In this document: positions 4,359-60,561 of the stretch, in pieces | How the letters are laid out: each line of letters starts with the position of its first letter | Position numbering within the stretch: the first letter of the stretch is position 1 | NCBI RefSeq assembly: GCF_023055435.1 | Contig: NW_025963791.1 | Location: forward strand, 32,426,001-32,490,000 | DNA: 64,000 bases | Direction: 5' to 3' | Source of the DNA: Haliotis rufescens | Lineage: Eukaryota | Program-made: the position numbers and the translations under genes | Notes under the pieces: generated by a model | What the model was told of the DNA's origin: nothing | The model's input: only the letters and a program-made list of their open reading frames with translations | The model's database searches: none

Positions 4359-4401
4359 TCAACAACACGTTGAATAACCATGTCATATTATAATTATGAT
4401 A

Positions 4402-20041: not shown

Positions 20042-21699
20042 ATACAGATACAAACTCCCAGAATTATCCTGTGTGTGAACAGCTTGGGGAGACAACTCAG
20101 GTGACCTTCTGGTGCCATGAGTGTGAGGTAGCTCTCTGTGACAGATGTGTCAAGATGCATCGTGCAAATCCAGCTTCTCGGAGCCATGAAATGTGTGATC
20201 GGTCTGGTGAGGTGGAACTGAAGAAAAAGAAACGAGTGCTTATGTGTCAAGAGCACAGAGATGAGCAAGTGAAATATCTCTGTAAAGACTGCAACAAGCC
20301 ACTGTGTCAGTCATGCTCCGTGGTCTACCACAGGAAGTGCGATTCTGTTGTCACACTAGAATCCCAGATGTCACGGATGAAGTCATCTCTGCGCACCAAA
20401 GGCCTCACCATACAAAGTGATCTTAATGACATATCGAAACAGATCGACAAATGCAAATCGAAAATTAACAAGATGAAAAGAGCTAAACTTTTGGCAACAA
20501 AAAAGATTCAGTCATCAACAGAGAAGATCATCGCCCGTTTGAAGGAGAAGGAAACGGCACTCATAAAAGACCTGGATGACATTGCAGACACACAGATCAC
20601 TGAGTTACAGGCTGATGTGAAACAGGCAGAGATTGAGTTGCAAATGTACAAACAACATGGCGAGTTCATTGACCAGACCCTTGTCTCGGACAGTGAGATG
20701 GACCTGTATAAAGCTTGTGAGGCCTGGGAGTCAGGGGCGGAAGAGGACAGGGTACAAGAAACAGGCAAATCAGAACGAAAACAAATACATAGCGTCAGAT
20801 TTGTACCAGAATCTGATACCAGTGAGCGCATTCTTGACGACTTGAAACTAGGGAAGCTGGACATCACATACACACAGGGTGAGACCGATGCCATGTCATC
20901 ACTTTTCCTGTATAAAACAGTGGACTTCAAGCGAGAGACTGATGAAAAATGTCCATGGCTGAGTGAGGTGACGGTTCTGTTTGTGGGGGATATACATGTA
21001 CTGACATTAGAGGCTTCAGACAGAAACAACAAGTGTGTGAAATCTGCCTACACACGTGACGATCAGCCATGTCTCAGTAAACTCGATTTTGATAATTTTA
21101 CGCATGGTGTATCCCAACTTAGTGACAATCGGGTTTTGGTAGCTGTTCCTAAGAGTTTTCAAATTGTAACGGCATCCGTAACTCCTGACCTCGAACTGGA
21201 GACAACCATTACAACACAGAAAGAGTACTACAGTATTGCTGTTCTGAACTCGTCATCATTCGCAGCAAGTTCCTACAGCTGTATTGATATATTAGACATG
21301 ACTGGTAAGGCCATCCGATCATTCACTGCCCACAATGACGTGGACCTGTTCAGTTACCCAAACTACATCTGTGTGAACAACAGCGGCCAGGTTCTTGTTT
21401 CTGACTGGGACAAGGGATCAGTAACTTGTCTGACGTCAGAGGGGGATGTTGTGTGGAGATACGTCCCCAAGGGGGATCGATCTCTCAGTTACCCTAGTGG
21501 TATTACAACTACCAACGAAGGCGATATCCTCCTTGCAGACAGGGACACAACCACCATAATTCAGCTTGCCGCACCTGGCCAGTTTGTACGAGAACTCATT
21601 GCAACAGAGGATGGGATCAACGACCCTGTTGGGGTGTATGCCGATAGAAATGGTTCCGTTTTTGTTTGTGATGAACGTACAATAAAACAGTTCATCTGA
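20042..21699 (+). CDS. TRIM terminal exon, copy 4: open reading frame (B-box1, B-box2, CC, NHL-like propeller; TRIM56/TRIM71/TRIM2-3-like), RING exon not in window
   Basis: Uninterrupted ORF 19999..21699 with a phase-1 acceptor ttctcttgacag at 20041. NHL-like blades (FSYPNYICVNNSGQVLVSDW, LSYPSGITTTNEGDILLAD, INDPVGVYADRNGSVFVCD). The first B-box1 Cys is Tyr (NYPVC). Confidence 0.8.
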
Positions 21700-24070
21700 T
21701 CAACAACACGTTGAATAACCATGTCATATTATAATTATGATATGTGTTTCTTAGTTGTTTAACGCCGTACTCAGCAATATTACAGCTATATGACGGCGGT
21801 CTGTACATGATCGAGTCTGGACCAGACCAGTGCATCAACCAAGTCAGCGAGCCTGACCACCCAATCCCTTTAGTCGCCTCTTACGGCATAGTCGCCTTTT
21901 ACGGCATGCATGGGTTGCTGAAGACCTATTCTACCTCGGATCTTCACGGGTCTTATTTTATATGGTGGAGACACTCGTCAATACTAAGACATGTGAACAT
22001 GTGAACAAAAGTGGGAATTGACTTTACTTTTAATATTTATGACCATGTACAGACAGATCCAATTGCCCCATCACAAGGTTGGTTTGTCATTTCCAGACGT
22101 GTTCAATGTTGTTTTATTTGTTTGTATCCAGTATGTTATGTAACTTTAATCGTTTGTTTTGAAAAAATTATATTGATGACTGACAGGTTTTTGTGATTAT
22201 CATCAATTCACTATGCAGATACACAATGTACAAAGCATATTGTCTTCATATCTGTTTTATGTATTTTTCTTAACTTCTCACCAAAAATTCAATTAAAGTT
22301 TATGTTTATGGAAATCCTGTGCATGTAATTCATTTCAAGCCGTTGCGATTCCCAGTGAAATGATCGCCAGAGTATCTGAATCACCCCGGTTGTAGAGATT
22401 TCGAGTTAGCAAAGGTCCACTTGGGGCTCATAATATCACTCACTGGTTTGTCTGATCCAGGTTCGATTATTTACAGACCGCCGTCATATAAATGTAGCTG
22501 GAATAATGCTGAGTGCTAAACTACGCATTGACCAGTCACAACTAAAAACAACTCTAACCCGATATTGGCGTGTTTGATATATATTTACCAACTCTGGAAA
22601 TGGTTCAGGTTTATCGTGGTGATGTCGTATTCATTTTACACATGATCAAATGTGCAGTAGGAAATGACATGCATGATTCCCAGATTTTGGCGACGTTTCC
22701 GAAACAACCCATCAAAAGAATTGATAAATATATCTTTAACGTCAAGTTTAACCATTCATAGATCCTGATCCAAATAATTAGGTTTGATAGGGAACGTCAT
22801 ATATGCAATGAGGAACAACAACAGTCATAATAGCATAATTGTACTTTACTCACTGAGCCAAAGGCAGTCACTTGTATGTAGGTAATGTATGCAACCAGTG
22901 AGGAATAATCTTAAAGTTAATCACAGGGATGTTTGATATTATTCGCAGAAATCAGACGAGAGGCTATTCCTGGTTCCAGATTAGAAACCGAACTGTACAT
23001 TGCCATCACAGAATGAGACGGACGCCATGAGCATACCTTGGTACATGCTACCAAACAGAAGCACACCATGGGTACGCTCCATGGAGAACGACCCGAGAAA
23101 AGAAGAGTCGTTACGATTTGGAGAAAACCAGCATGAAATGAATGGGCCTTCTGAAGAGACAGAATCTGATTTTACGTTTAACACATTTATTGTGTTCCTT
23201 AATTTAGTTTAAACATATTTTATTCAGATTGAAATGGATTGGGAACAAGTTATCCAACTTAGAAGTCCCTCTCCATGGTATTTACAAAAGCTTGTACAGT
23301 AAATCATATACACATGTACAGGGAAAACAGTAAAGAAAATAAGTGTATAGATAACAAAACAAATGTACAACAGACAAAAGAGAGACTAGTATATTAACTT
23401 TAAAGTGTTACCAAAATCTCTTTGCATGACTTATAAACATTTGCATTACCTCAAAGATATGTTGAATTTCGAGTTCCTTCATTTGTCAGCATATCTTACA
23501 CACTGTCTTGTTATTTGTTGCAGAAGTTATAGCTGGATGAGGGGAGTGATCCTATTAGGCGGTGTAATATGCTCTTATGTGATATAAACCCTGAAGAAGA
23601 AATTTGTAACATTTTGCGTATTTTGCGCTCTGTCACGACAGCCTGTTCAACGATCCTTGCATATCAGTATCAGGAAGCCTGAGAAGCACTTCATAACAAG
23701 CAAGCAGCCATTTCATCGAGTCTGCCAATCCGATTCTCTTTAGATTGCGAGTATGGAATTCCGGAAACCTATCCTTCCCCACAATGATCATGAACATTGG
23801 CACAATTTCACGTGATACACATGTTAAAAAATATCGTAAGTCTCTATGGTAGGTCTGTCATAGCGTTAAGTGTGCTTGGTGCACATTGTGAACAATAAAC
23901 TACAGATCGGATTCATTTACCACTTGTGTTTCATTTCAAGCAAAGCATTATTGGTATTGGTTACCTCCCTGGATACAGTTATGAAACAAAATCGGTATGC
24001 AATAGTGCGCTGGGTAGTTGCGATAACCGTGAACCCTTTCAGCCGTCGTTTGTCATGAGCTCCTGTATGT

Positions 24071-25096: not shown

Positions 25097-25357
25097 CATG
25101 CTGACACAAAGCTTGAAGAGATTGAGATGCAGATGTACAGACAACACTGTGAGTTCATTGACCAGGCATTGGTATCGGACTGTGAGATGTCGGGAGCTGA
25201 AGAGTTGGGGGATGTCAGTGACACAGACACAACAGAAACACGCCGAATAGATGACATCAGGTTTACACCAGACGCTGAAAGTCCTACTGGGACGATTGAC
25301 ATCTCATTTAAAGATAGGAGGAAGTGTTTGCCGACTCCGTGTGGCTCATACAATTAA
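25097..25357 (+). pseudogene. Degenerate TRIM relic (coiled-coil end/linker only)
   Basis: Encodes KLEEIEMQMYRQHCEFIDQALVSDCEM..SGAEELGDVSDTDT..RRIDDIRFTPD, near-identical to 52125-52330 but with internal deletions. Confidence 0.85.
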
Positions 25358-42789: not shown

Positions 42790-45098
42790 ATGTCGGGATC
42801 TGTGGCTGAGAAACCGAGTGACTTGCTGACGTGTGTAATGTGCAATAATGTGTACACAGACCCCTGTACACTGAGGTGTGATCACACATTCTGCAGGAAA
42901 TGTGTCACAGGATACATCCAAACCAGACCAGATGCTGTACAGTCCAAGACGATCCCCTGTGCCTTCTGTCGTCAGTTTACCAAGGTCCCCCACCCTAGCA
43001 GGCCTCTGGAGGAATGGGCGGGGCAGATCAAACCCAGTATCATTATACAGCGGCTGATTGACATTCATGAACCTGAGCATACAAGATCAGGTATTAAATA
43101 TATTTAAATAATATATTTATGATTAAGAAAAGTGCTTTGCCTAAAGAAATTATGAAGGCGAAATACGTTCGTATGACACTGCTTATTGGTCTTAAGCTCC
43201 TCAGTTCCATTTATAAAAGAACTGAAGACAATGTCACGCTAAACAAGTGAAATAATATTTTCATCTGTTATGCAGTTAAACTTTTGCCAGATTGTTTTAC
43301 ATGCATTTCACGAATCAGAGATTTTTCTTTATATTTTATCTTTAAGGTTTAATATTTGTTAAACATGACATTAAAGTTGTCCAACTCTTGTCCAATTATG
43401 ATTGCAATAATTACTATTATTCATTAAAAATGTTTATTTGTAGATATTGCGGATTCCCAACACTGCTATGTTTGTTGGGAACTAGGGGAGACAACTCGTG
43501 CAGCTTTATGGTGCCCTGACTGTGACGTTCCGCTCTGTGACAGATGCGTTCGGACACACCGTGCATCCCCTGCCTCTCGTGAGCATCAGCTGTCCGATCT
43601 TTCTTGGAGGCACAGAATGAAAAGGAACCGGAAATTAACGTGTACAGACCACACGGATGAACAAGTCAAATTTCTTTGCATGGATTGTAGCAAATTGTCC
43701 TGTCAGTCGTGCAGTGTTCTTTACCATCGGAAATGTGAATCTGTCCTCACGATTAAATCACAGCTGCCGCTGCTGAAGTCTGGATTATCTTTGAAAAGAA
43801 AGATCATGCACAACGCTCTGCAGAACAAAAGGACTAAGAAATCCAAGCACGAATTAAAAGTGAAACACCTGTCAGAGACGCATCAGTTAATACATGCAAA
43901 CATTCAGGCAATTACAGAAACAATTGTTAAAAACATAAAACTCAAGGAACAACAATTGTTAGATGAACTTGATACCATAACGAGGACCATCACCGATGAC
44001 ATACAGGCTGTTTTGAAACACGAAGAGATCGAGATGCAGATGTACAGACAACATTGTGAGTTCATTGACCAGGCCTTGTTATCGGACTGTGAGATGGACC
44101 TGTATGACGCGTATCAGGCCTGGGAGTTCGGAGCTGCTGACTTTGGTGATTGTCCAGACAGAGACAAAGCAGACACACGGAGAATAGACGACATCAGGTT
44201 TACACCAGACACTGACAACGTCCAGCAACTCCTAGATGACCTACTACTGGGAACGATTGACGTCACATATGAGGATGTGCAGAAACCACCTTCTTATTGT
44301 TTGTTATATGAGACGATGGACGGACGGACAGATGTTGATGAACGGGAACCGTACCTGCGTGATAATACTGTTCTTGTTGTAAACGACATTGAAACACTCG
44401 TAGTGACCGACTGGAATGAAAAAAGCGTGAAATCCTTCTACACCAGGAAGGATCATTCATGCCACAGCAAACTATCCCTCAAAAACTCTCCATTTGGAGT
44501 GGCATATTTGAAGGAAAACCACGTTATCGTTACGATCCCAAGATCTCATCAGATTGTGACAATCGGAGTGACCCCTGACTTAGATCTGCTTTCAACCATC
44601 GACACCAGCAAGGCGTATTACAGTGTTGCTGTTCTGAATCCCGCGTCTTTAGTAGCCGGTGCCATTAACTGTGTGGACATCTTAGATATGGAGGGGAAGG
44701 CTCTGAGATGTGTCAGCGGACCTGGAGATGAGTTACCCCTGACCTATCCATACTACATCAGCGTGAGCAGCAAGGGCAACATACTTGTGTCTGACTGTTG
44801 GAAAGGAGTAGCAAAATGCCTGACATCAGAGGGTGACGTTATGTGGACATACGCCCCTACCGAAGACAAAGCAATCAGTGATCCTTGTGGCATCGTGGCA
44901 ACCCGCACGGGTTATGTTCTACTTGCAGACCGGCGTTTGAACAAGGTCGTGCAACTGACAGAGAAGGGAAGGTTTGTCCGAGATGTAATCACAACACGGG
45001 ATGACATCAAGTCACCATTGGGTCTCGCTGTGGACAGACATGGCTCCATATGTGTGTGTGATAAAGACGGCATCAAACGCTTCATTCTAACGTTATGA
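42790..45098 (+). CDS. TRIM-A: RING-Bbox1-Bbox2-CC-NHL E3 ligase, join(42790..43090,43444..45098), 651 aa
   Basis: ATG follows ttccag. C3HC4 RING (CVMC..CDHTFCRKC..CAFC). Phase-1 intron gtatta...tttgtag. The spliced frame is continuous with ORF 43617..45098. Confidence 0.92.
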
Positions 45099-46406
45099 AA
45101 TTGTTACATGTGAATAGAACGTACATTTGGCCTATATTATCCTGTATCCAAGACAGGATGATATCAAGTCAACACTGGGGCTCTTTCTGGACAGACATGG
45201 CTCTTAAAGTTTGTGTAATAAAGACGGCATCCAACGCTTTATTCTGACGTTATGAAACTGTAACACGTGGCTGAAACGTTATGATGATACCCTATCCTGT
45301 ATCTAAAAATCCGTGACAAATTGCATTTGTATCTGTTCTCTTGTGTATTTCGAAGACATGCACGTGTAGGTATGTGAGCAAATAAATGTCATTTCCTGTA
45401 TGATGCTGACAAACCTAGAAACATAATCGGGGCGAACCGGGATTCGAACCTACAATCATAGGGTTCTGGCGTGCCAAGGGACGCAACTCTGTACAGCGAA
45501 TCGCGGCGCCTTAGACGACTGGGCCACCCGTGCCCCCTCCTGTATGTGAAACAGAAGCTATGCAAGAACCAAACAGTACGAACCACCACTTTCTTCAATT
45601 AAATGTGAGTGAGTGAGTGAGTATGGTTTTACGCCGCTTTTAGCAATACTCCAGAAATATCACAGCGGGGGACACCTGCAATGGGCTCCCCACATTGTAC
45701 CCATGTCGGGAATCGAACCCGGATCATCGGCGTTACGAACGAACGCTTAAACCACTAGGCTACCCGACCGCCTCTTATGTAATGAAAGGCTGGATGAAAT
45801 ATCGTAGCATCCACCTTTCCTGTTTAAGATTTGTCTCCTGGTGGGACACATACCATGAGGTATACAGAAGAGTGTTGTACACTACGATAAACGTCTAAAC
45901 ATTTCATCGTTTACATACTCTTACGCCCCGTGAAGATCCGGGGTAGAATATATAGGTCTTCAGCAACTCATGCCTGCCGTAAGAGGCGACTAACGGGATC
46001 GGGTGGTCAGGAACACTGGCTTGGTTGATGCATGTCATCGTACCCCAATTGCGTGGATCGATGCTCATGAAATGAGCCACTTGATTGTCTGGTCCAGACT
46101 CGATTATATACAGACCGCCCTCATATAGCTGGGATATTGCTGCGTGCGGCGTTAAACAACAAACAAACAAACATATTCTTACTCCCCAAGTCATCTCCAT
46201 ATATAACGTGGCCATACGGTACAAGTTCAAATAGGGAGTCTCATCAGACAACGGAGTCAGTGATGACCCACGAGGCTGGGCACGATAACGTAAAGTCAGC
46301 CAGGTCAGGTCGTTTCTTACGATTAGCATGAGATACGTGGGACTGCCTGACACACTGCCCCAACATCCTTTCTGAGTCTCGGCGCCAAATGTGTTTATGG
46401 TTATAG

Positions 46407-46567
46407 TGAGTGAGTGAGTGTGGTTTTACGCCGCTTTTAGCAATATACCAGCAATATCACGGCGGGGGACACCAGAAATGGGCTTCACACATTGTACCCA
46501 TGTCGGGAATCGAACCGGGGTCTTCGGCGAGACGAACGCTTTAACCACTAGGCTACCCGACCGCCCC
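46407..46567 (-). mobile_element. SINE family B inserted after the segmental duplication
   Basis: 14-bp TSD gtttatggttatag (46393-46406 and 46568-46581). The paralogous site at ~61687-61700 is empty. Confidence 0.93.
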
Positions 46568-48043
46568 GTTTATGGTTATAGAAAACGGCGATTCCTTCGG
46601 AATTGGTACAGGGAGCCTGAAGCCATGCATTTAGTAATACAGCTAAAGTTAGCTTCAAACAAATAGCAATATAGAAATACAGGATGTATACTCCTCAACT
46701 CAGGTGGGGGGCGGTCGGGTAGCCTAGTGGTTAAAGCGTTCGCTCGTCACGCCGAAGTTCGATTCCCGACATGCGTACAATGTGTGAAGCCAATTTCTGG
46801 TGTCCCCCGTCGTGATATTGCTGGAATATTGCTAAAAAGCGGCGTAAAACTATTCTCACTCCCATATTCAACTCAGGTGGAGACTGAGTGTGACTAAATA
46901 CTTATATATGCTTTCATACAAATATAATTCGATATCACGAGGGAACTGGTGCATTTTCTGTCACATTCAAACATACGATAAAGTTTCCTACCAGTATGAA
47001 GCATCTTATCCTTCTCAAACGTTGAGTAGTATGGTTGTGGCATACGCTTATAGTATGACAGCGACCTGCTCATGTTAATATACACCTTGTGGGTACATGG
47101 ACGAGCTTACTATCTTTGCACCAATATGCCAGTACCATGGTGGAACTTAACATATCGCAGTTATCAGATAACTAGCAGAAGAAACGGCAGCTTCGGTTTG
47201 TCTTTATATGTTCTCTGTGGGTCTTCAGTTTTGAGATTGTTGATATCTTGATTTCACCCACTTGCATTTCATTGCTACAATATGTTGCAGCTATGTATGT
47301 CGTCATGGATAAAAACAAGGGCTGGCCATGGCCATCAGTGTATAAATCCCTGAAACAATAAAATAGGTTTTCCGCTTGACACAATACACTAGACATGCAC
47401 AGTATTATTGGACGTTGCATGATGATCAGATGAGTAGCACTTATTCCAGATATTGTAGAATTCGTGTCACAATTCGTCAAAATGTAAAGACATATTTTTT
47501 TATTTTATTCACGGGGATACTGTTTTTGTATTTTCTTAAACAAGCCTAAAACTAATGTATACTCCACAGGATGTAGAAATCCATTTTTACGTCAACACAT
47601 AATAATAATCTTTGTAGAATTAAGGTCATCGGGTAGATTATGCGTTCTCAATAAAAAAACGATTGAACATAGACCAAAGAACATAAGAATCAAGTCGTCA
47701 GTTCGATATCTACAATATGTGCGTTGCATAACATAAAAATATAATATGGATTTTAAATGTGTATTTGTTGATTCAGGCTGTATATATCAGAAATGCTTTC
47801 GAAAGTGATCGTATCAGTAGTGGCTGCGGAGTGACCTCCCTTGTGTGTAAGGGGGCGTTGTATGTCAACACAGAGAACTGTCGCGGGTGGGATTCTCGCA
47901 TCGAGTCGTGGCATTGAATATCAGGGGAAGTAGTATTCAACACCTCACCGCTGTTTTAGGGTACGTGTTCCGCTCAATTCACTTATGTGTGTCATGTTCT
48001 GTTAAGATGTTAGCCTACACGGATAAACTCCATGTCATTTCGA

Positions 48044-48066
48044 TAAAGTGAAACCGAAAATAGAAA
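48044..48066 (+). promoter_or_regulatory. Candidate ISRE/IRF element (aagtGAAAccGAAAataGAAA)
   Basis: Matches GAAANNGAAA plus a third GAAA. Retained at 63781-63800. Lies ~90 bp after a candidate donor (agg|gtacgt, 47961) and ~3 kb upstream of TRIM-B. Confidence 0.4.
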
Positions 48067-51006
48067 TACTTAGCAGAGTAAGTTCTGATAACACCATGAC
48101 ATGTTTAGTGTTGATGTCACAAAGGTGTAAATGTACATGCTAACAGTACCTGGTATTTCTAAAATATACAGATTTCTTTTACATACATCAAACAGGCGAC
48201 TTCGAAGATTGTTACCATCTTCAACCACATGCAAATGCTCACCACCCTCTCAATGCATGTTGAGCGCCTCTGTGGTCTAGCGGTAGAGCGCCCGACCTGA
48301 GAGCAGAAGGTCGGGGGTTCGATCCTCGGCCGCGTCATACCAAAAGACGTTAAAGGATGGTACTTGTTGTTACCCTGTCTGGCGCTCGGCTTAAAAGGGC
48401 TAAAACAAGGACTGGTCGGCTCGCAGTCAGTATACTGTGTCTGAGTCGGGTATTCATGTTAAACTGTGGCATGGTATCTCAGTGAGCTAGCACTATCAAT
48501 CGGCAATAGGTCCGGACTAGTACAAGCAGCCACACACACACACACACACACACACCGCACACACACACACGCGCGCGCGCGCATGCACGTCGCTTTATTA
48601 GTGCAATAATCTTCACCTCACCCTGCCTCTTTGTTCTGTGAGTTGTGCTTACATGGCAGAAAAGAAGTCTTTTAATATCACTAGGGTACAATATGCTTAC
48701 TATTTACCGTGCAAGAAATACATGATCAATGATACTCTACTGGGAATAGAAACAGATGGATGCATGATATATCGTCAAGTTATCACCAGTCGTGACAACA
48801 GCAAATTAATATTTTAGTTTAGCAAAGTAAACTGTCGAGCGTTTACAAAATATAATTCTTTGTTTATTGTATTTCTGAAACTGATTAATATCAGTGTTGT
48901 GTTGTTTTCTAGAAGGCTGGTAACAACTTTACCATGACGCATATACATAACTATGATGGTTTGACACTTTCGTATTCAAACCGTCACAATATCTAGAATT
49001 AGCCTTGGGGAATTAGCTCGGGATCGGGCACCAATCAAAGAAACCAAACAAAGTGTCTATGGCCAGCTCCTTTATTGGGGATTTCTCGACAGTCTGTTTA
49101 CATTTAAAATAAGAAATATTTTTACATATATAGTACAAAGTCATGTAGACATTTACAGTTTTCACAAAAGAAGCAGTTATCACAATAGTGTGTGACATTA
49201 AACAATGATTACACATAAGAGTGTAAATTTCATGATACATAAACGTACGGTAAGCTAAGTGATAACACAACCAGTTACAAATAACAATATTAAAGTCAGT
49301 CTACAAAGATACCTACGAACAAGACTTACATAATCTTATGTGACACTTATTTTCAGCCACTCCTAATTATGATTACGCCTTGCTAACTGGGACTGCCATA
49401 AGGTATGTCTTATTTACGTACAATTCTAGTTAAACCCAGTGTCGGTATCAAATGTACGCAGATTTAATATAAATAACAACGTGTAATGGCTGTAACTTCT
49501 GAGCATATATCATTCATTTTTTATGCTGGTATATGTTATACTTGAAGGCCATATCTATAATTGATCTAAACTACCGCAGCAAACAAACTATATCTGATAG
49601 CATTCATCCACATACACTGAGTTAACGGGCCCATTAACAAATGTCCATTCACATTACTGAATGGTATAATATATGGATATATGGATATTTTAGACATTGC
49701 TCGTAATGTAGACATGTTTGCTGAAGCTGTGTTACAAATGCATTATGCTCATACCTATGTAAGTACAAGAGAGTTACCTATCATATTTGTACATCGCTAA
49801 CAGATTAACTAAATGATTACATGGATATTATTACTGATTTTAGCTCTGGCTTAGTTGTGCTATTAGCATAAATTTGTGTGATGTAAATACATCATATATT
49901 AGCTAAAAGAAATTAACGTTTTCTGCCAGGCTAGTTCAATCAAATAACTCTTATATTATTTAAGTTATTTAAAGCAGTCTGGATTCTGTTTATGAACAAG
50001 TAATACACGTACATGCAATGTATTGTTCATCATAGAATCCTTACATGTACATACTTCGTGTGATATAAAAAGTCTCATCAAAGTGAGGTAGTTCGTTTCA
50101 TTTACACGACGTTTTCACATATATACAAATTAACTGAATCACACTAAAATAACAACACCCAGATAAAATACACAGCTTGCTACCACGACACCCGAGTCTT
50201 AACACCTTATTTGCGACTCGGAACATGTTTGATATTCAATATATGCTATACCGTGGAGTAAATACGTAAACGATAGTTTTGTCTAAACCTAACGCACATA
50301 CATTGGACAGATGAGTCCGTTTAATAGATACAACCCACTTAATATATTTGCCCTTATACGTGGTCCATTACATAAGATTAAATACCTTTACAGCTGATAA
50401 TATTGCTCCATATACGATACAAATTATAAAACAATTTAATTTATAAATTTAGAGAAATAGTAAAGTGAACATGACTTACCTTCAAAGAGACCAAACAAAG
50501 TGTCTATGACCAGCTCCTTTATTGGGGATTTCTCGACAGTGAGGTACCCCCGGGGCTTTTCTAAGAAGTTTGACCAAGTGATGTCCACATAAGTTGAATA
50601 ATAATTGATGAAGTTGTCCGAAAATATTGATATGATGTTGACGTATCAGCGGCAAGCGGTCACCGAAATGGAGGCTGAGACACGTACAGATAGATGATGC
50701 TGACCATGCTCCAAGGATGTTATGTAATTGTCTAGATAGCTGCGACCTTCACATGTGAGACTGACTGAATACAGCACCTTACATTCAATTTAATATAACA
50801 CCATAAAGACTATTACCACAGTTACCTATTTTATAAATATTGAGGAAAAAATGACCAATTTTACAACTTTGACATAACTAGAACTGCATTAATTTCTAAA
50901 CCAAACCGGCCTTATATCACCAGTATGCATACATGTTGTAATTACAGTTCACTTTACGGAAAATACTTTTCTCATTTGTTTTCTATCAAATTTTCCAGTT
51001 TTACAG

Positions 51007-53197
51007 ATGGCGACGTCACGGGCCGAGAAAGTGATGGAATTCCTCACCTGTGTGATCTGCCAGGAACTGTACACAGACCCCTGTACACTGAGGTGTGATC
51101 ACACATTCTGCAGGAAATGTGTCACAGGATACATCCAAACCAGACCAGATGCTGTACAGTCCAAGACGATCCCTTGTGCCTTCTGTCGACAAGATACCAA
51201 GGTCCCCCACCCCAGCCGGCCAGTGGAGGAATGGGCGGGGCAGATCAAACCCAGCATCATTATACAGGGGCTGATTGACACACAGGAAACTGCGAGACGA
51301 ACGACAGGTGTGATTTTTATACATTAACAGGTTATCCAGCAATTGAATGACATATGACAGCATGAACACTTACAGTGAAACACATCCGCCACAGACCCAT
51401 CTTTTTTGTTTCTAATTCCATTTTCATCGAAATAGTTTATGTCTGTTTCCAATCATGCCTTCAAATCTGTAACTTGAACATGTAAATGGATATATGTATG
51501 TGTTAAATTATACATAACCCACTCACACCTAATAATGATATTCCTTCACAGGTGATGATTCCTACAACAACTGCTGCCTGTGTGACAAGCTAGGGGAGAC
51601 AACTCCTGGGACCGCCTGGTGTTCTGATTGTGAAGAGTCCCTCTGTGGCAGATGTTCCAAAATACACCACGAAAGTTCTGCAACTCGTGACCATGAATTA
51701 TGTGACCTGTCTGGAGAGGTCAAGGTGAAGAAGACACGCAAGGTCATGTGTCAGGAACACAAGGATAAGAAAGTAGAATATCTCTGTCTGGACTGCAACA
51801 AGTCACTGTGTCAGTCATGCTGTGTGGTCTACCACAGGAAATGTGACTCTGTCGTCACAATCAGCTCTCAGATGACGGGGATAAAGCTTGGGTTATCTCG
51901 TAAAGTCAATGGTCTTAAGAAAAAGCTTTTTGGTAAAAGCAAAAAGATAGAAAAACAAAAATCAAGAGTAAGTGAAATAAAAGACAATAAAGCGTCCGTA
52001 AAAAAACACATCAGATCAACTACAAACAGACTCGTCGAACACATCAAGCACAAGGAAAAGAAGCTGTTGGATGAATTGGATGCAAAAACAGATACTCATA
52101 TCTCTCATGTTCGCGCAGCTATAAAGCTTGAAGAGATTGAGATGCAGATGTACAGACAACATTGTGAGTTCATTGACCAGGCCTTGGTATCGGACTGTGA
52201 GATGAACCTGTATGACGCGTATCAGGCCTGGGAGTCGGGGGCTGTAGAGTTGGGCGATGTCATGGACACAGACACAGCAGACACACGAAGAATAGATGAC
52301 ATCAGGTTCACACCTGACACTGACAACGTCCAACACATCCTAGATGACCTACAGCTGGGGGAGATTGACGTCACATACCAGACTGGATCATGTCGGAAAT
52401 CTTCTCCGGTAATGGTTGACACGACTGACGGCAGGGTGGAGGGAGATGTGGAGGAACCTGATCTACATGACGTCACAGTCCTGCTTGTAAATGGTATACA
52501 GACATGTGTTGTCACTGACGCCAAAAACAAGTGTGTGAAATCTTTCTACACTACAAACAATCAACCATGTCATAGTAGACTCCCCCTGGATGACTCTCCA
52601 TCGGGAGTAACACAGTTGAAGGAGAAGCAGGTGATGGTTGCTGTCCCTGACTCCAGTCAGATTGTAACAGTAGAAGTGACCCCTGGCCTGGTGCTGCTCT
52701 CAACCATCACAACAAGCAAAGGGTACTACAGTCTCGCTGTTCTAAGTCCTTCATCTCTAGCAGCAGGTGCAATTCACTGTGTTGATATCCTGGACATGGC
52801 GGGACACGTGCTGACGTCAGTCACTACACACAACAATGAGACACTGTTTACCTACCCCGACTACATGTGTGTCAACAACAAGGGCAACATGCTCGTGTCT
52901 GACTGGGAAAAGAAGTCTGTGACATGTCTGACGTCAGAGGGGGATGTTGTGTGGAGATACGCCCCTACCGGAGACAGAGCACTCAGCTTCCCTTGTGGTA
53001 CCACAACTACCGGCACAGGAGGCTTCCTGCTTGTAGACACCCACAAGGTGATACACCTGACAGAGTCGGGGGAGTATGTCAGAGATGTTCTCACGTCACA
53101 GGATGGTGTGTGCTCTCCACAAGGTCTCTGGTCGGACAAACATGGCTCCATATTTGTGAGCGATTATGAAAACATCAAGGAATTTATCATGACATAG
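51007..53197 (+). CDS. TRIM-B: RING-Bbox1-Bbox2-CC-NHL E3 ligase, join(51007..51307,51552..53197), 648 aa
   Basis: ATG follows ttttacag. Intact RING. Phase-1 intron gtgtga...ttcacag. The spliced frame is continuous with ORF 51725..53197. Confidence 0.92.
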
Positions 53198-53661
53198 GGA
53201 TTGAGTAAATACAATGTGACGCATTATGTCGCTACGATCTACTAGGGCCTAAACAATTTCTGGTTCGGGTTACCCTCCAATATACACCACATCTCTGACG
53301 CACACAATAATATAAATCCAACAGAAACAAAGACCCGTATGTTACAATAACTGCAAACTCACGACCCCGAACTCTGACGTCCAAGGAGATACACCGTGAC
53401 CTCGCGTCAGTGCACCAACGTCCAACGTTTGAAACAATGTCTAAACATAACATCGGGAACTCCCATGTATAGGACTAGGAAAACTGTAATCAACTTTCAA
53501 AACATCAATTGAACAAACTGTTTAAAGGCGAATATATTAGCGTATGGCATCATATTGCATATATGTTCACTGCCGTCATAATGGCCAGCGCTTGCGACAG
53601 ATGTCAGAAACTATACCTCATATATAGCCCCGGGGAATTGTCCTATTGACATATAATTAGA

Positions 53662-53819
53662 NNNNNNNNNNNNNNNNNNNNNNNNNNNNNNNNNNNNNNN
53701 NNNNNNNNNNNNNNNNNNNNNNNNNNNNNNNNNNNNNNNNNNNNNNNNNNNNNNNNNNNNNNNNNNNNNNNNNNNNNNNNNNNNNNNNNNNNNNNNNNNN
53801 NNNNNNNNNNNNNNNNNNN
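53662..53819. other. Assembly gap (158 N)
   Basis: N run. Confidence 1.
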
Positions 53820-56199
53820 AGCCACTCTGTATCAGCTATTGCTCTGAAATAATATCTATGTACCGTAGGCCTGTGGCCCCTTCAGCACTACAATAAAGAT
53901 TGACTGTTTGATCTACTGTGGCATACACTTACTGGTAATAGCTATTAGCATACTTTGGTGAAACAAGAGACAGTGAAATGGCGCTTACAAGCACGCGGGA
54001 TCACAATCAGAAAGACTCACGGATTCGAACCGACGACTAACGGATCTAGAGGCAAGGGAGAGAACTCTACACGAGTGATTGTGTTGCCCATTGCCGCCGA
54101 AGTAGATTAGGAGCAGTGTAGCTCATTATGTCCCAATACTACATTTGTCATAAAACAGGTGTTGCCTTTTATAGAACACTAAGATGAATGATATTCAGTA
54201 CTAGTTCATTGTGTCCGTAGGACGGAGGCAAAGCAAAGCAAAGTATCAATGTTGTAATTTGTCACTGATGTATTGCAATCATATTATGATTATGTATGAT
54301 TTTACGCCGCTTTTAGCAATATTCCAGCAATATCACGGCGGTTGACACCAGAAATGAGCTTCTCGCATTGTCTGCATGTTTGGCGTGACAGGCGAACGCT
54401 TTGACCACAAGGCTATGGTCATTGGCTAGGAGCCTGACTGAAAACTGACAATACATGAGTTAAGAACAAAATAAAACAAAATACTGTTACTGAATAACAA
54501 ATTGATGGGCTTCTAACAGCGGTAGTAGCATAAAGATTCTTGTGAGGATTCTGGCTCGTTGGCCTTTTTGGCATCATTTAAAATTCTTTGTACTTAAACT
54601 ATACATAAGTTTATAGCGATTAACTGTTTATTTTCAGTTGATATTGTTTGCAAGTACTCCATGTTTTACGGAATTAAAACCTCCAATAAGCTCTATGCTG
54701 ATTTATATTTCGAAAGGTATGAATCACCACTCGTCGAGATGTCGCAGTTAGCTCCCTTGTATATTATGCAGACCTGGCAGACACCCTGTGTGTCTCGGCG
54801 GGATACCTTTATTTCAACACCTCCAAGACACACAGTAAACCGCACACAGTGCACACGATGAACTAGTGTATGGCCAGAACATCGATAGCATCGACTGTTA
54901 CAGGTATGTGTTTCTCAAACACTGATTTAGTTTTGTAAACACACATGAATTTCTGATCGATAGTTCACACGAAGAAAGTATTATGCTGATAAGAAGGAGC
55001 TGTACGAACCAGGGCAATAATGAAATGCGAAAGTATTGACATTATAACTTTCTTGTATTGTTATGAGTTCTGCAAGTGTCTGGCATACATGTTAAATCAC
55101 GCAATACAGATATGTTGACTTGGTCCCGAATACAATCGTTTACAGTTACCTCCCTTGTATATTGACAGAGGCTATGGGTTTCACCATGGTGCTGACATGG
55201 GTCGATAAAAGTCATTTTTGGACAACACTGTATCTGAATTATTCCAAAGCTGTTAATGCTAAACACAATCGTATTTATAACAGGAATACATCAACCGCAC
55301 TTACCTCAAGAAGTTACATGAGTTAATCATAAAGAGTGATGTAATGAGTTAGTGAGTGAGTTGGGTTTAACGCCGCTTTAATATCACGGCGTGTCAACTT
55401 AATGTGGGAGGAAAGCCTGAAGTGTTGCAGGTCTCAGACTTCAACTTCGGTGAAACCAACGAGCACGGGTATGGTGCTGACAAACCTAGAAACATAATCG
55501 GGGCGAACCGGGACTCGAACCCACAATCATAGGTTTCTGGCGTGCCCAAGGAATACAATTCTGCACTGCGAATCACGGCGCCTTAGACGACTGGGCCAAT
55601 CGTGCCCCTAGTAATGTAATGAAAAAAGGCGTTGTCCCCAAAATAGTATAATCTACACACATTTCTAAGACGTCTTGTTTAACATGATATCAAGATATGA
55701 AGCATAATGTATTCCTGTAGGACTATGGTAGGGTCAATCTATATTCAATTATTCAAGAATGTTGCACTTATATAGCGATGTGCATGCTCTTGTGTGTGGG
55801 CACACGTGCTGTGTATCTTTGAGGCTGCTTGTACTAGTCGAGACTAATGCCGATTTTATGGTGTTAGCCCTCTGAGATATATGTACCATGCCGCATTTTA
55901 ACAGGAATACCCAAGACAGACACAGTATACTGACTCTATCTTGTTTTGTCCCATAATGCCGAGCGCCAGGCAGGGTAACAACAAGTACCGTCTGTTAACA
56001 TCTTTTGTGATGACAAGGCCAGGGCTTGAACCCACGGCCGTCACTCTCCGGGCAGATGCACGTCATTCTCGACGTTGAAAAACAAGCTATATGGTTTACT
56101 CATTGACATCATTGTAGATTGTCTCAACCAAGACATTCGTAACCACATATACAACGTTCAAACAAGGTTATTTGTGCGACGTCATGACCTGTTTTACAG

Positions 56200-56497
56200 A
56201 TGGCGACGTCGTGGAATGAGAAAGTGACGGAGTTCCTCACCTGTGTGATCTGCCAGGAACTGTACACAGACCCCTGTACACTGAGATGTGATTACACATT
56301 CTGCAGGAAATGTGTCACTGCATACATCCAAACCAGACCAGATGCTGTACAGTCCAAGACGATCCCCTGTTCTTTCTGTCGACAAGATACCAAGGTCCCC
56401 GACCAAAGCAGGCCAGTGAAGGAGTGGGCGGGGCAAATCAAACCCAGCATCATAATACAGGGGCTGATTGACACACAAGCTGGAGATACTACTGAAG
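56200..56497 (+). pseudogene. TRIM-C orphan RING exon with no cognate exon 2 in the window
   Basis: Acceptor ttttacag|ATG and phase-1 donor aag|gtaaga. The RING His ligand is changed to Tyr (CDYTFC). The intron is interrupted at ~56739 by the duplicated segment. Confidence 0.8.
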
Positions 56498-57299
56498 GTA
56501 AGACACGCCCACATTTTAAGGATGATAATTCTAGAATTCCACAGCAATTTGTTCTGTTTTTATTACTTTCTTGTGTAGTCTTGTAAGAGTGAAATGTACA
56601 CAGGACTCTTGAGAATGAAAGAAAGAAAATATAAAGAATGAATGCATGAGTGAATTTAATTAATTAATTTATTGATCAGAAGATTCCCAAAACATCCACG
56701 TAATTATTTACAAACAAAGTAATCAAACAGACATATCAGAATCAGTGCACATGTGACAGATGTTACCCCAATGACAACAGACAAAATGATGGTGCAAGTC
56801 AAGCTTACATATCCTTTTCAACTAATTTGCTGCCTGCTTTTCATGTCGTCTACTTGGCCTCATGCACAGGAGGTGATCAGAAGGGATGATTCACTTTCTT
56901 CTCAATTTTCTTTTAATTCAGCCATATACGATTTGTTACACCACTGGGTTTTTTACAAGCATATAATTTTGTATATGTATGCCTTGACTAGACTGTAACA
57001 CTAGTTGATGCTCGAGATAAAATTAAAACATAATAAATGTGCAATATGAATTATGAAATTGATCAATACGCTTCGGGAAAAAATGCAAGCTCAAATTGAT
57101 GTCACAGTCCACTGACAAGACAATTTACTGTATCTGGAATTAACTGAACATTTCTTTATATGATTAAAATACGTAAAACGTGAATCAACCTTGAAAACTT
57201 ATATACATCAATGTATTTAGTAATCACACAGTGTTTCGAATCCCCCTCAATCGTCATTTTGTGAGAATTGCTCAACTGACCATGAAAGTGACCAATCTT

Positions 57300-57455
57300 N
57301 NNNNNNNNNNNNNNNNNNNNNNNNNNNNNNNNNNNNNNNNNNNNNNNNNNNNNNNNNNNNNNNNNNNNNNNNNNNNNNNNNNNNNNNNNNNNNNNNNNNN
57401 NNNNNNNNNNNNNNNNNNNNNNNNNNNNNNNNNNNNNNNNNNNNNNNNNNNNNNN
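57300..57455. other. Assembly gap (156 N), probably a (GT)n microsatellite
   Basis: Its flanks match those of the 42165-42285 microsatellite region. Confidence 0.9.
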
Positions 57456-58040
57456 TGCGCGTGTGTGTCTGTGTGTGTTATCTGTTGTTATACATCATAT
57501 GTATCAACGTCTCACGCTCCAGGAGTGTGGTTTGGGCCCGGGCGTCTAAAGCGCCGTAGTACGCTCTTCAGAGTATCCTTTGACACTGGGTTCGAATCCT
57601 ACATTCGCCCTGATTAAGAGTTTTTGCCAGCATCATACCCTTGCTGAAAAGTGGTAAACGTTTGACGCCTACATTAATTCGGGGTTTCCTCCAACATGAA
57701 ATGCTCACTCACTCACTCACTCACTCACTAGGTACATTAATTCGGATTTTCCTCCAACAAGAAATGCTCACTTATTCACTCACTCACTGGGTACATTAAT
57801 TCGGGTTTTCCTCTAACGTGAAATGCTCACTCACTCACTCACTCACTCACTCACTCACTCACTGGGTACATTAATTCGGGTTTTCCTCCAACGTGAAATG
57901 CTCACTCACTCACTCACTCACTCACTCACTCACTCACTCACGGGTACATGTAATGTTATTATCACGGATATATACTAAGTCGTAAACACTGATATCATAC
58001 TGTGTTTCAGGGCTCCTGTATTGCTGTTATTGTGTTCCAG

Positions 58041-60125
58041 ATGTCGGGATCTGTGGCTGAGAAACCGAGTGACTTGCTGACATGTGGAATGTGCAATAAT
58101 GTGTACGCAGACCCATGTACACTGAGGTGTGATCACACATTCTGCAGGAAATGTGTCACCGGATATATCCAAACCAGACCAGATGCTGTACAGTCCAAGA
58201 CGATCCCCTGTTCTTTCTGTCGACAAGATACCAAGGTCCCCCACCCTAGCAGGCCTGTGGAGGAATGGGCGGGGCAGATCAAACCCAGCATCATTATACA
58301 GCGGCTGATTGACATTCATGAACCTGAGCATACAAGATCAGGTATTAAATATATTTAAAAAATATATTTATGATTATGAAAAGTGGTTTGCCTAAACAAA
58401 TTATGAAGGCGAAATACGTTAATTTGTTCGTATGACACTGCCTACTGGTCTTAAGCTCCTCAGTTCAATAGATAAAAGAACTGAAGACAATGTCACGCTA
58501 AACAAGTGAAATAATATTTTCATCTGTTATGCAGTTTAACTGTTGCCATATTGTTTAAAAAGCATTTCACGAATCAGAGATTTTCTTTATCCTCTATCTT
58601 TAAGGTTTAATATTTGTTAGACATAAAATTAAAGTTGTCCAACTCTTGTCCAATTATGAATGCAATAATGACTATTATTCATTAAAAATGTTTATTTGTA
58701 GATATTGCGGATTCCCAACACTGCTATGTTTGTTGGGAACTAGGGGAGACAACTCGTGCAGCTTTATGGTGCCCTGACTGTGAAGTTCCGCTATGTGACA
58801 GATGCGTTCGGACACATCGTGCATCCCCTGACTCTCGTGAGCATAAGCTTTCCGATCTTTCTTGGAGGCACAGAATGAAACGGAACCGGAAATTAACGTG
58901 TACTGACCACACAGATGAACAAGTCAAATTTCTTTTCATGGATTGTAGCAGATTGTCCTGTCAGTCGTGCAGTGTTCTTTACCATAGAAAATGTGAATCT
59001 GTCGTCACGATTAAATCACAGCTGCCGCTGCTTAAGTCTGGATTATCTTTGAAAAGAAAGATCATGCACAACGCTCTTCAGAGCAAAAGGACTAAAGAAA
59101 TCAAAGCACGAATTAAAAGTAACATCCCTGTCAGAGACGCATCAGTTAATACATGCAAACATTCAGGCAATTACAGAAACAATTGTTAAAAACATAAAAC
59201 TCAAGGAACAACAATTGTTAGATGAACTTGATACCATAACGAGGACCATCACCGATGACATACAGGCTGTTTTGAAACACGAAGAGATCGAGATGCAGAT
59301 GAGTTCATTGACCAGGCCTTGTTATCAGACTGTTAGATGGACCTGTATGACGCCTATCAGGCCTGGGAGTCGGGGGCTGTAGAGCTGGGGGATGTCAGGG
59401 ACACAGACACAGCAGACACACGGAGAATAGATGACATCAGGTTTACACCAGACACTGACAACGTCCAGCAACTCCTAGATGACCTACTACTGGGAACGAT
59501 TGACGTCAAATATGAGGATGTGCAGAAACCACCTTCTTATTGTTTGTTATATGAGACGATGGACGGACGGACAGATGTTGATGAACGGGAACCGTACCTG
59601 CGTGATAATACTGTTCTTGTTGTAAACGACATTGAAACAGTCGTAGTGACTGACTGGAATGAAAAAAGCGTGAAATCCTTCTACACCAGGAAGGATAATT
59701 CATGCCACAGCAAACTATCCCTCAAAAACTCTCCATTTGGAGTGGCACATTTGAAGGAAAACCACGTTATCGTTACGATCCCAAGATCTCATCAGATTGT
59801 GACAATCGGAGTGACCCCTGACTTAGATCTGCTTTCAACGATCGTTACAAGCAAGGCGTATTACAGTGTTGCTGTTCTGAATCCCGCGTCTTTGGTAGCC
59901 GGTGCCATTAACTGTGTGGACATCTTAGATATGGAGGGGAAGGCTCTGAGATGTGTCAGCGGACCTGGAGATGAGTTACCTCTGACCTAGCCATACTACA
60001 TCAGCGTGAGCAGCAAGGGCAACATACTTGTGTCTGACTGTTGGAAAGGAGTAGCAAAATGCCTAACGTCAGAGGGTGACGTTATGTGGACATACGCCCC
60101 TACCGAAGACAAAGCAACGTTATGA
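58041..60125 (+). pseudogene. TRIM-A' pseudogene, exons 58041..58341 and 58702..60125
   Basis: Duplicate of TRIM-A with a +1 frameshift at ~59095, a 16-bp deletion at ~59301, TAG at 59334-59336, TAG at 59988-59990, a 216-bp deletion at 60117/60118, and a B-box2 C>F change. Confidence 0.92.
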
Positions 60126-60561
60126 AACTGTTACATGTGAATAGAACGTACATTTGGCCTATATTATCCTGTATCCAAGACAGGATGATATCAAGTCAAC
60201 ACTGGGGCTCTTTCTGGACAGACATGGCTCTTAAAGTTTGTGTAATAAAGACGGCATCCAACGCTTTCTTCTGACGTTATGAAACTGTAACACTTGGCGG
60301 AAACGTTATTATGGTACCCTATCCTGTATCTAAAAATCCGTGACAAATTGTATTTGTATCTGTTCTCTTGTGTCTTAAGTATTTCGAAGACATGCACGTG
60401 TAGGTGTGTGAGCAAATAAATGTCATTTCCTGTACATGGAGCAAAGTGGTATGTCAACTGACAAATAACGAGCAAAGCATTTCTCTGTGAGATCATCCCG
60501 TTCTAAGTGCATATCAATGTTGGCAAAGTGTGCAACTTGATCTGTGGTCCTCCTGTATGTG

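What the first reader, a model, noticed from the sequence alone, without database searches (positions are those of the whole stretch)
42851..59510. Divergent TRIM paralogs share near-identical islands: candidate recombination-anchored domain-shuffling system
Seen: TRIM-A and TRIM-B have unalignable introns and clearly divergent B-box, CC and propeller sequences. Yet their RING cores (42851-43063 vs 51068-51280) differ at only about 11 of 213 nt by my count, and the first 106 nt are identical, including all synonymous sites. A second island at the CC/propeller junction (44022-44268, 52130-52377, 59281-59510, relic 25110-25310) is similarly homogenised. A ~36-nt block (gtctgacgtcagagggggatgttgtgtggagatacg) is identical between TRIM-B (~52926) and the distant array exons (~4108). 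Inference: these islands sit at module boundaries and could be maintained by gene conversion. They could act as crossover anchors that swap variable NHL recognition heads onto a constant E3 module.
Basis: partly seen in the sequence, partly recalled or inferred. Interest (0 to 1): 0.8.

Follow-up and report, generated by a model that had tools for sequence, protein, structure and literature searches.

The report
Gene-conversion islands in abalone TRIM-NHL genes
In a red-abalone family of at least 78 ubiquitin-ligase (TRIM-NHL) genes, the RING core and the linker/propeller part are kept alike across old subfamilies by gene conversion while the B-box/coiled-coil part diverges. This pattern is already known from other large immune-type gene families, and nothing shows that the islands serve to swap whole domains.

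Summary
TRIM-A and TRIM-B share 202/213 nt in the RING core, with the first 106 identical, while the rest of the genes is about 75% identical or unalignable.

The window lies in Haliotis rufescens chromosome C13. The same RING core occurs in at least 78 copies.

Among 31 intact genes, RING synonymous divergence is the same within and between subfamilies (0.079 vs 0.092). In B-box and coiled-coil it rises 5-fold (0.12 vs 0.55-0.68). So synonymous sites do vary in the RING core, but the deep divergence has been erased. That points to concerted evolution, not constraint.

Subfamilies are older than the split between abalone lineages, yet RING core and linker proteins cluster by lineage, not by subfamily. 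GC3 is highest in both islands.

The 'second island' is the 5' edge of a larger shared part covering most of the NHL propeller. There, hypervariable codons sit in alternate loops, so on one face.

Whole-domain swapping between subfamilies is not seen: B-box/coiled-coil and NHL trees give the same subfamilies. Only recombination within subfamilies and short patches are seen.

The closest precedent is the zebrafish NLR-B30.2 family. This scan had already noted hypervariable TRIM-NHL arrays elsewhere in this genome, but not the conversion islands.

The parts
42790..43090 (+). TRIM-A exon 1 (ATG to GT donor, 301 nt, phase 1): leader, RING and a subfamily-specific tail
42851..43063 (+). RING-core island in TRIM-A, the family-wide homogenised tract
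   Evidence: sharp 3' edge in 310/435 locus pairs
43091..43443 (+). TRIM-A intron (GT..AG), unalignable to the TRIM-B intron
43444..45098 (+). TRIM-A exon 2: B-box1, B-box2, coiled coil, linker, six-bladed NHL propeller, stop
44022..44255 (+). Junction island in TRIM-A (end of coiled coil plus linker); 5' edge of the shared 3' part
44394..44950 (+). Central NHL of TRIM-A. In the other subfamilies this part has between/within divergence of 1.0-1.6, with hypervariable loops. A itself is an outlier here
51007..51307 (+). TRIM-B exon 1
   Evidence: spliced joint seen in RNA-type contigs
51068..51280 (+). RING-core island in TRIM-B
51308..51551 (+). TRIM-B intron (GT..AG). No depth over 51335-51488 in the two probable RNA runs; joint 51303->51548, cut +4
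51552..53197 (+). TRIM-B exon 2 (B-boxes, coiled coil, linker, NHL)
52130..52363 (+). Junction island in TRIM-B
52926..52961 (+). 36-nt block identical to the four array units; encodes the conserved NHL motif CLTSEGDVVWRY
56200..56497 (+). Orphan RING exon D (G3-type tail, GT donor) with no exon 2 of its own type behind it
58041..60130 (+). TRIM-C, a 93.5% copy of TRIM-A (RING island 58102-58314) and a pseudogene: 16-nt deletion near 59300, in-frame stop near 59335, and loss of the part matching A 44875-45088
25108..25284 (+). Isolated relic of the junction island; first 82 nt are 97.6% identical to B
1..23419 (+). Tandem array of about 5.5-5.9 kb units (97-99% identical) encoding RING-less B-box/coiled-coil/NHL genes. 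The 36-nt block is at 4108, 9611, 15511 and 21428
53662..53819 (.). Assembly gap in the 3' flank of TRIM-B, outside all islands; flanks collinear with sister gene L035
57300..57455 (.). Assembly gap upstream of TRIM-C's RING exon; flanks collinear with the TRIM-A locus

Best explanation
The window is part of a very large tandem family of two-exon TRIM-NHL genes (RING, B-box1, B-box2, coiled coil, NHL propeller) on red-abalone chromosome C13.

The family evolves in two kinds of segment. The exon-1 tail, intron, B-boxes, coiled coil and extreme C-terminus diverge freely. They define subfamilies older than the split between North-East Pacific and Indo-West Pacific abalones. A RING-core tract of about 213-290 nt, and a 3' tract of about 0.9 kb (linker plus most of the propeller), are repeatedly copied between paralogs of different subfamilies by ectopic gene conversion. 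Deep divergence is therefore erased there, at synonymous sites too.

Inferred: protein constraint on the RING and linker keeps enough identity for the recombination machinery to act. The diverged flanks stop the tracts, which makes the edges sharp.

Inside the propeller the conserved scaffold is shared family-wide. Loop codons on one face are hypervariable, and conversion patches spread and recombine these variants. The likely function (inferred) is a germline repertoire of E3 ligases with a constant effector, subfamily-specific dimerisation modules and diversified target-binding faces.
For: Shown here:
- A-B RING 202/213 identical. At least 40 copies are 92-100% identical over the full 213 nt. 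A 42-mer of the core occurs 78 times with <=3 mismatches, 22 of them exact.
- pS within vs between subfamilies: RING 0.079/0.092, junction 0.088/0.145, NHL 0.144/0.299, B-box 0.119/0.554, coiled coil 0.122/0.683.
- RING tip branches (median 0.015) match B-box/coiled-coil tips (0.014), but RING internal branches are about 0 against 0.13-0.41.
- Subfamilies are trans-specific. RING-core amino-acid distance is 0.091 for same lineage/different subfamily and 0.136 for different lineage/same subfamily. The junction gives 0.171 vs 0.269. B-box (0.413 vs 0.228) and coiled coil (0.682 vs 0.354) go the other way.
- VT[S]Y occurs in 20/21 Indo-West Pacific proteins from 5 subfamilies and in 0/52 North-East Pacific ones.
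- P0040 and P0067 keep the ancestral G1 leader joined to a converted core.
- GC3 is 0.617 (RING) and 0.612 (junction), against 0.42-0.53 elsewhere.
- PHI p<=0.001 for exon 2, NHL, and within G1 and G2.
- 17 mosaic 60-nt patches, 4 with the best match in another subfamily.
- 22 of the 27 hypervariable codons that map onto B lie in odd-to-even loops of a 24-strand model (pLDDT 92.5), and none in the other loops.
- B is spliced and expressed in a probable RNA run.
Against: - No nucleotide sequences from other species could be fetched, so the cross-species test is at protein level only.
- The 40 scored copies are those most similar to A's island, which biases the sample.
- RING identity does not decay with distance over 12 Mb. 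Copies on two other contigs (C35, C90) are as similar over the 42-mer. Frequent local conversion alone would not predict this.
- RING diversity (pS about 0.09) is about six times the roughly 1.5% divergence of B's ortholog in related species. Homogenisation is therefore slow, or largely predates the recent expansions.
- PHI within the islands alone is not significant (p 0.20, 0.22).
- AU rejection of subfamily monophyly on RING data is weak (p 0.039 for G2, not significant for G1 and G4).
Confidence: 0.8

Rival explanations
1. Conversion was historical, not ongoing. A handful of founder genes, one per subfamily, exchanged RING, linker and NHL segments in the North-East Pacific ancestor. Each founder then expanded by tandem duplication, with little conversion since.
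For: RING pS across the family (0.08-0.09) is close to within-subfamily B-box pS (0.12). RING identity shows no distance decay. RING tip branches equal B-box/coiled-coil tip branches.
Against: The CPCC variant is scattered in single members of G2, G4 and the A-type. 29% of RING informative site pairs are incompatible. AU rejects G2 monophyly on RING (p 0.039). NHL mosaic patches exist between close paralogs. This is a variant of the best explanation, not exclusive of it.
Confidence: 0.25
2. One reading: the islands are functional crossover anchors, kept so that variable NHL heads can be swapped onto a constant E3 module.
For: The B-box/coiled-coil and NHL halves are incongruent within subfamilies. 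14 of 22 best single breakpoints fall at alignment columns 180-280, next to or inside the junction island. Short NHL patches are shared across subfamilies.
Against: Both halves give the same subfamilies with 98-100% support, so no between-subfamily head swap is seen. The RING island is not at a boundary. A single-breakpoint scan will place breaks at the border of two differently evolving segments in any case, and it was not permutation-tested. Conserved tracts attract conversion passively, so no selection for 'anchors' is needed.
Confidence: 0.1
3. Nucleotide-level constraint: the islands carry an RNA structure, a regulatory element or a small-RNA target that keeps synonymous sites fixed.
For: Copies on other contigs are as similar over the 42-mer. 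Identity does not fall with distance.
Against: Synonymous sites do vary within subfamilies at about two thirds of the B-box rate (0.079 vs 0.119), yet do not accumulate between subfamilies. Folding z-scores are +0.56 and +0.22. There are no Rfam matches. Lineage-specific residues are shared across subfamilies.
Confidence: 0.05
4. Birth-and-death evolution with strong purifying selection on the RING and linker proteins only.
For: The RING-core protein is nearly invariant across four species.
Against: A-B dS is 0.17 in the island and 1.12 in exon 2. Codon identity among same-residue pairs is 0.94 in the RING and 0.88-0.96 over most of the junction island, against 0.7-0.8 elsewhere.
Confidence: 0.03
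5. Assembly artefact: reads from many paralogs collapsed into one consensus in the islands.
For: The islands are multi-copy and pile up 16-20 fold in contig depth.
Against: Every copy has private substitutions and its own flanks. The same pattern is seen in four species' assemblies. The gaps lie outside the islands.
Confidence: 0.01

Closest known systems
Zebrafish NLR-B30.2 family (Howe et al. 2016, Open Biol 6:160009, PMC4852459)
   Same: A large innate-immune-type family of hundreds of genes, mostly on one chromosome arm. Groups are defined by one domain (NACHT) that stays distinct between groups. The recognition domain (B30.2) is exchanged across groups by gene conversion and shows positive selection in surface loops. 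The groups are older than the species split. The argument also rests on synonymous divergence by domain.
   Different: Here the family is TRIM-NHL in a gastropod. The group-defining module is B-box plus coiled coil, and the recognition domain is an NHL propeller. The effector RING core forms an additional separate homogenised tract of only about 213-290 nt inside exon 1.
Young primate TRIM genes on chromosome 11 and the TRIM5/TRIM22 cluster (Han et al. 2011, PLoS Genet 7:e1002388, PMC3228819)
   Same: Tandem TRIM paralogs with gene conversion. [quoted passage not shown]
   Different: Those are B30.2 TRIMs in a handful of copies, and conversion was judged not extensive. Here at least 78 copies show family-wide homogenisation of defined tracts.
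TRIM-NHL proteins TRIM2/TRIM3/TRIM71/Brat/Thin (solved NHL domains)
   Same: RING, B-box, coiled coil and a six-bladed NHL propeller. The model of B's NHL matches TRIM2/TRIM3 NHL at TM 0.77-0.80, E 1e-12.
   Different: Sequence identity is only 16-21%. No filamin domain was detected. The abalone genes are massively amplified, with hypervariable loops on one face. The conserved animal TRIM-NHLs are single-copy developmental and RNA-binding regulators (my own knowledge).

Membership tests
TRIM-NHL (class VII-like tripartite-motif E3 ligases) | N-terminal C3HC4 RING finger | tested here: met
   Translation shows C-x2-C...C-x-H-x2-C-x2-C...C-x2-C. Close homologues carry PF00097/PF13923/PF13445.
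TRIM-NHL (class VII-like tripartite-motif E3 ligases) | B-box zinc finger(s) after the RING | tested here: met
   PF00643 in A and B exon 2 (E 5e-6, 2e-5). Two B-boxes (PF22586 plus PF00643) in the array ORF.
TRIM-NHL (class VII-like tripartite-motif E3 ligases) | Coiled coil between B-box and C-terminal domain | tested here: inconclusive
   Only a weak PML_CC hit, below its cut-off, in B (21.8 bits vs 23). The region is low-GC and fast-evolving. It was not modelled.
TRIM-NHL (class VII-like tripartite-motif E3 ligases) | C-terminal six-bladed NHL beta-propeller | tested here: met
   PF01436. AlphaFold2 model with pLDDT 92.5 and 24 strands. Best PDB matches are TRIM2/TRIM3 NHL, TM 0.77-0.80.
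TRIM2/TRIM3/TRIM71 orthology group | Filamin/Ig domain between coiled coil and NHL | tested here: not met
   No filamin family at E<=0.01 in A or B exon 2. The NCBI names 'TRIM2-like/TRIM56-like/wech-like' are automatic.
Concerted evolution by ectopic gene conversion | Synonymous divergence in the tract far below that of flanking coding sequence for the same gene pairs | tested here: met
Concerted evolution by ectopic gene conversion | Paralogs within a lineage more alike than orthologous subfamily members between lineages, in the tract only | tested here: met
   At protein level: RING core 0.091 vs 0.136 and junction 0.171 vs 0.269, reversed in B-box and coiled coil.
Concerted evolution by ectopic gene conversion | Phylogenetic incongruence between tract and flanks; recombination signal | tested here: met
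   Star trees with scattered subfamily labels for RING and junction, against 100% supported subfamilies for B-box/coiled-coil. PHI p<=0.001 for exon 2. Within the short islands alone PHI is not significant.
Concerted evolution by ectopic gene conversion | GC-biased composition of converted tracts | tested here: met
   GC3 is 0.617 and 0.612 in the islands, against 0.42-0.53 elsewhere. Amino-acid composition was not controlled for.
Concerted evolution by ectopic gene conversion | Directly observed conversion events (haplotypes, pedigrees) | not testable with these tools
   Only Logan contigs were available for DNA runs.
   The same subfamilies come out of both halves.
   14 of 22 best breakpoints lie at columns 180-280, but the triplets are not independent, no permutation test was run, and the border between segments confounds the result.

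The most novel reading that the evidence does not exclude
Gene conversion here is not only homogenising. It works as a germline diversity engine: the constant RING core, linker and propeller scaffold supply the homology that lets short tracts move hypervariable loop cassettes between at least 78 paralogs of different subfamilies. The result would be a combinatorial repertoire of intracellular E3-ligase receptors in an animal without adaptive immunity.
Probability: 0.2. Interest if true: 0.7.

Novelty: new member of a known kind. Interest (0 to 1): 0.45.

Why it matters
It gives a clean invertebrate example of gene conversion acting differently on the domains of one gene. It has a built-in control: subfamily-specific and family-shared segments lie in the same exon. 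It also has a datable frame, because the subfamilies are older than the split between abalone lineages.

For annotation and evolutionary work on abalone immune-type genes there are two practical consequences. Trees built from the RING or linker will mislead. dN/dS on the propeller must allow for recombination.

If the propeller face proves to bind pathogens, the family would be a molluscan counterpart of fish finTRIM and NLR-B30.2 repertoires. That matters for disease resistance in farmed and endangered abalones.

Tried and rejected
- Protein constraint alone: rejected by the synonymous-site contrast.
- RNA structure or a known RNA family in the islands: folding z-scores +0.56 and +0.22, no Rfam match.
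- Distance-dependent conversion: no decay of RING identity from 10 kb to 12 Mb.
- Whole-head swapping between subfamilies: not seen.
- A strict three-sequence breakpoint scan found nothing. A relaxed one gave 22 non-independent triplets, treated as inconclusive.
- PHI within the RING and junction alone: not significant, the tracts are too short.
I tried neither by another route.
- Literature: five searches found no paper describing this abalone family or its conversion pattern. One apparent hit was only about read-trimming software.
- Spliced models were searched exon by exon. The joined coding sequence was not assembled or sent to any tool; only exon lengths and frames were checked.

Full report
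**Observation**

The RING cores of TRIM-A (42851-43063) and TRIM-B (51068-51280) align without gaps at 202/213, and the first 106 nt are identical. A self-comparison of the window and a four-way alignment add two more copies. One is TRIM-C (58102-58314), part of a 93.5% segmental copy of the whole A locus (41603-48263 vs 56739-63998). The other is an orphan RING exon D (56261-56473).

The island has sharp edges inside exon 1. The last 27 coding nt before the GT donor, and the intron, do not align between A and B. The junction island aligns among A, B, C and a relic at 25108-25284. The 36-nt block is exact in B and in all four array units. A and B exon 2 are otherwise 74.6% identical.

The two assembly gaps lie outside all islands, and their flanks are collinear with paralogous copies. 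No gap was filled.

**Gene models**

Each gene has two coding exons.
- A: exon 1 42790-43090, intron 43091-43443, exon 2 43444-45098.
- B: exon 1 51007-51307, intron 51308-51551, exon 2 51552-53197.

Both have GT..AG introns, and the exon lengths keep the frame. Exon 2 carries B-box and NHL Pfam domains.

Contigs of a probable RNA run from the same organism skip B's intron at exactly this GT..AG. One of them matches B exon 2 over 259 nt without a mismatch, and the intron has no depth. That these runs are RNA is the tool's guess.

C is a pseudogene, with a 16-nt deletion, a stop and a 3' deletion. The array at 1-23419 has no RING exon.

I searched exon 2 alone and did not assemble or submit the joined coding sequence.

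**Organism and size of the family**

Homologues of B's exon 2 are annotated Haliotis rufescens proteins on a contig of 45,695,856 bp, which is the length of the window's contig C13. Relatives occur in H. cracherodii, H. rubra and H. asinina.

The 213-nt island finds 172 candidate places in the genome. All 40 that were scored are 92-100% identical over the full length. A 42-mer from its centre occurs 78 times with at most three mismatches, 22 of them exact. Of these, 74 lie on C13 (30.3-33.3 Mb and 42.5 Mb), one on contig C90 and two on C35, with the remaining copy also listed.

In pairwise comparison of 30 loci, the island-containing match ends within about 12-37 nt of island position 213 in 310 of 435 pairs.

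**Constraint or conversion**

I fetched 5 kb around the other scored copies. I kept 31 genes with an intact exon 2 and built codon alignments.

A-B dS is 0.167 in the island and 1.12 in exon 2. B-box plus coiled coil defines subfamilies G1, G2, G2b, G3 and G4, with A and L067 as singletons; the multi-gene subfamilies have 100% support, apart from G2 at 80/76.

Proportion of synonymous differences within vs between subfamilies:

| Segment | Within | Between |
|---|---|---|
| RING | 0.079 | 0.092 |
| Junction | 0.088 | 0.145 |
| NHL | 0.144 | 0.299 |
| B-box | 0.119 | 0.554 |
| Coiled coil | 0.122 | 0.683 |

So synonymous sites in the RING core change at about two thirds of the B-box rate among close paralogs, yet no deep divergence builds up. 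The RING tree has tip branches as long as those of the B-box/coiled-coil tree (0.015 vs 0.014). Its internal branches are essentially zero, and subfamily labels are scattered. A uniformly slow rate cannot produce this; erasure of old divergence can.

GC3 is highest in the two islands (0.617 and 0.612, against 0.42-0.53), as expected from GC-biased conversion. Neither island folds better than shuffled sequence, and Rfam finds nothing.

**Cross-species test**

I therefore used 73 full-length proteins returned.

The B-box/coiled-coil tree shows that G1, G2, G3, the A-type and two further subfamilies each contain members from both lineages. One lineage is North-East Pacific (rufescens, cracherodii) and the other Indo-West Pacific (rubra, asinina). 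The subfamilies therefore predate that split.

Amino-acid distances:

| Segment | Same lineage, different subfamily | Different lineage, same subfamily |
|---|---|---|
| RING core | 0.091 | 0.136 |
| Junction | 0.171 | 0.269 |
| B-box | 0.413 | 0.228 |
| Coiled coil | 0.682 | 0.354 |

A serine in VT[S]Y is present in 20 of 21 Indo-West Pacific proteins from five subfamilies, and in none of 52 North-East Pacific ones. CP[CS]C is largely replaced by CAFC in the latter.

Two G1 proteins, P0040 and P0067, keep the ancestral G1 leader CSIC[FI] joined to a North-East Pacific-type core. These are partial conversions caught in the act.

**The 'second island' re-read**

A sliding ratio of between- to within-subfamily divergence gives these values along the alignment:

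| Alignment columns | Segment | Ratio |
|---|---|---|
| up to 222 | B-box and coiled coil | 4-21 |
| 228-300 | Junction (A 44022-44255, B 52130-52363) | 1.0-2.7 |
| 306-348 | Start of the NHL | 2-4 |
| 354-520 | Central NHL | 1.0-1.6 |
| last 45 codons | C-terminus | 4-6 |

The drop at column 228 happens within about 12 codons. The junction island is therefore the invariant 5' edge of a shared 3' part of about 0.9 kb. It stands out only because it lacks hypervariable loops.

**The propeller**

Within subfamilies pN/pS is 0.71-0.92 in the NHL, against 0.27-0.44 in B-box, coiled coil and junction. Windows above 1 recur periodically.

A model of B's NHL (pLDDT 92.5) has 24 strands, and its best PDB matches are the TRIM2/TRIM3 NHL domains. 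Of the 27 hypervariable codons that map onto B, 22 lie in odd-to-even loops and none in even-to-odd loops. Corrected for loop length, the chance of this is about 2e-4 by my arithmetic. In an up-and-down propeller this places them on one face.

Close paralogs with 0-3 differences per 45 nt in the 5' half show patches of 10 or more differences in the NHL. In 17 windows of 60 nt, a gene differs by at least 9 nt from its nearest B-box/coiled-coil relative but by at most 1 nt from another gene. In four of these the other gene belongs to another subfamily.

**Domain shuffling**

The NHL tree, and even the central NHL alone, recover the same subfamilies as B-box/coiled-coil. No whole-head swap between subfamilies is seen.

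Within subfamilies the two halves disagree (AU p 0.002-0.04, with clades chosen after seeing the trees), and PHI is significant. A relaxed breakpoint scan puts 14 of 22 breaks at columns 180-280. The triplets overlap, no permutation test was run, and the border between two differently evolving segments would attract breaks anyway.

**Limits**

- The 40 scored copies are those most like A's island.
- RING identity does not fall with distance. Copies on other contigs look equally similar over 42 nt, but could not be fetched.
- RING diversity (about 0.09) exceeds the roughly 1.5% divergence of B's ortholog in related species. Homogenisation is therefore slow, or largely preceded the recent expansions.

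**Comparison with what is known**

The closest precedent is the zebrafish NLR-B30.2 family. There, conversion keeps NACHT groups distinct while B30.2 is exchanged across groups and is positively selected. Primate TRIM clusters show limited conversion, with a breakpoint between RING and B-box2. No paper on this abalone family was found.

Earlier notes of this scan describe hypervariable TRIM-NHL arrays elsewhere in this genome and the D/C chimeric locus. None mentions the conversion islands.

**Verdict**

Gene conversion is well supported. The anchor-and-shuffle 'system' is not supported. This is a new member of a known kind.

Noticed in passing
window 32949-35444 (+): An intronless 831-aa ORF with leucine-rich repeats and a TIR domain (a Toll-like receptor) sits between the TRIM array and TRIM-A.
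   Followed up: no
window 1-23419: Four tandem units of about 5.5-5.9 kb, 97-99% identical, encode B-box/coiled-coil/NHL genes without any RING exon. Three units have the ORF split in the same way (for example 2684-3154 and 3111-4052) and one is intact (19999-21699). RING-less relatives are also annotated in H. rubra.
   Followed up: partly
window 56200-56497 and 56739-63998: An orphan RING exon with a G3-type tail lies 240 nt upstream of the point where the copy of the TRIM-A locus begins, so two RING exons stand in tandem before one broken exon 2. NCBI's LOC124127979 has isoforms with different RING exons (P0029, P0030).
   Followed up: partly
window 42972-42978: TRIM-A alone has GTCAGTTT where B, C, D and the family have GACAAGAT. 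These four changes within seven bases turn Q-D into Q-F, a clustered change or a tiny conversion from an unseen donor.
   Followed up: no
window 42477-42700 and 57670-57954: (CACT)n-type microsatellite just upstream of the RING exons of A and C.
   Followed up: no
window 24066-24426, 36493-36855, 39906-40202, 48261-48549, 55803-56053 and 1869-2151 in each array unit: A dispersed repeat of about 280-360 nt, 78-94% identical, on both strands. Probably a transposable-element fragment.
   Followed up: no
G000:C35:4801589-4810454 and G000:C90:26101039-26101080: RING-core 42-mers with only 1-2 mismatches on two other contigs, so the homogenised core is not confined to chromosome C13. They could not be fetched.
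   Followed up: partly
window 42724-43080 (-): A 118-codon open frame runs antisense across the whole RING exon of A. It is probably a by-product of composition.
   Followed up: no
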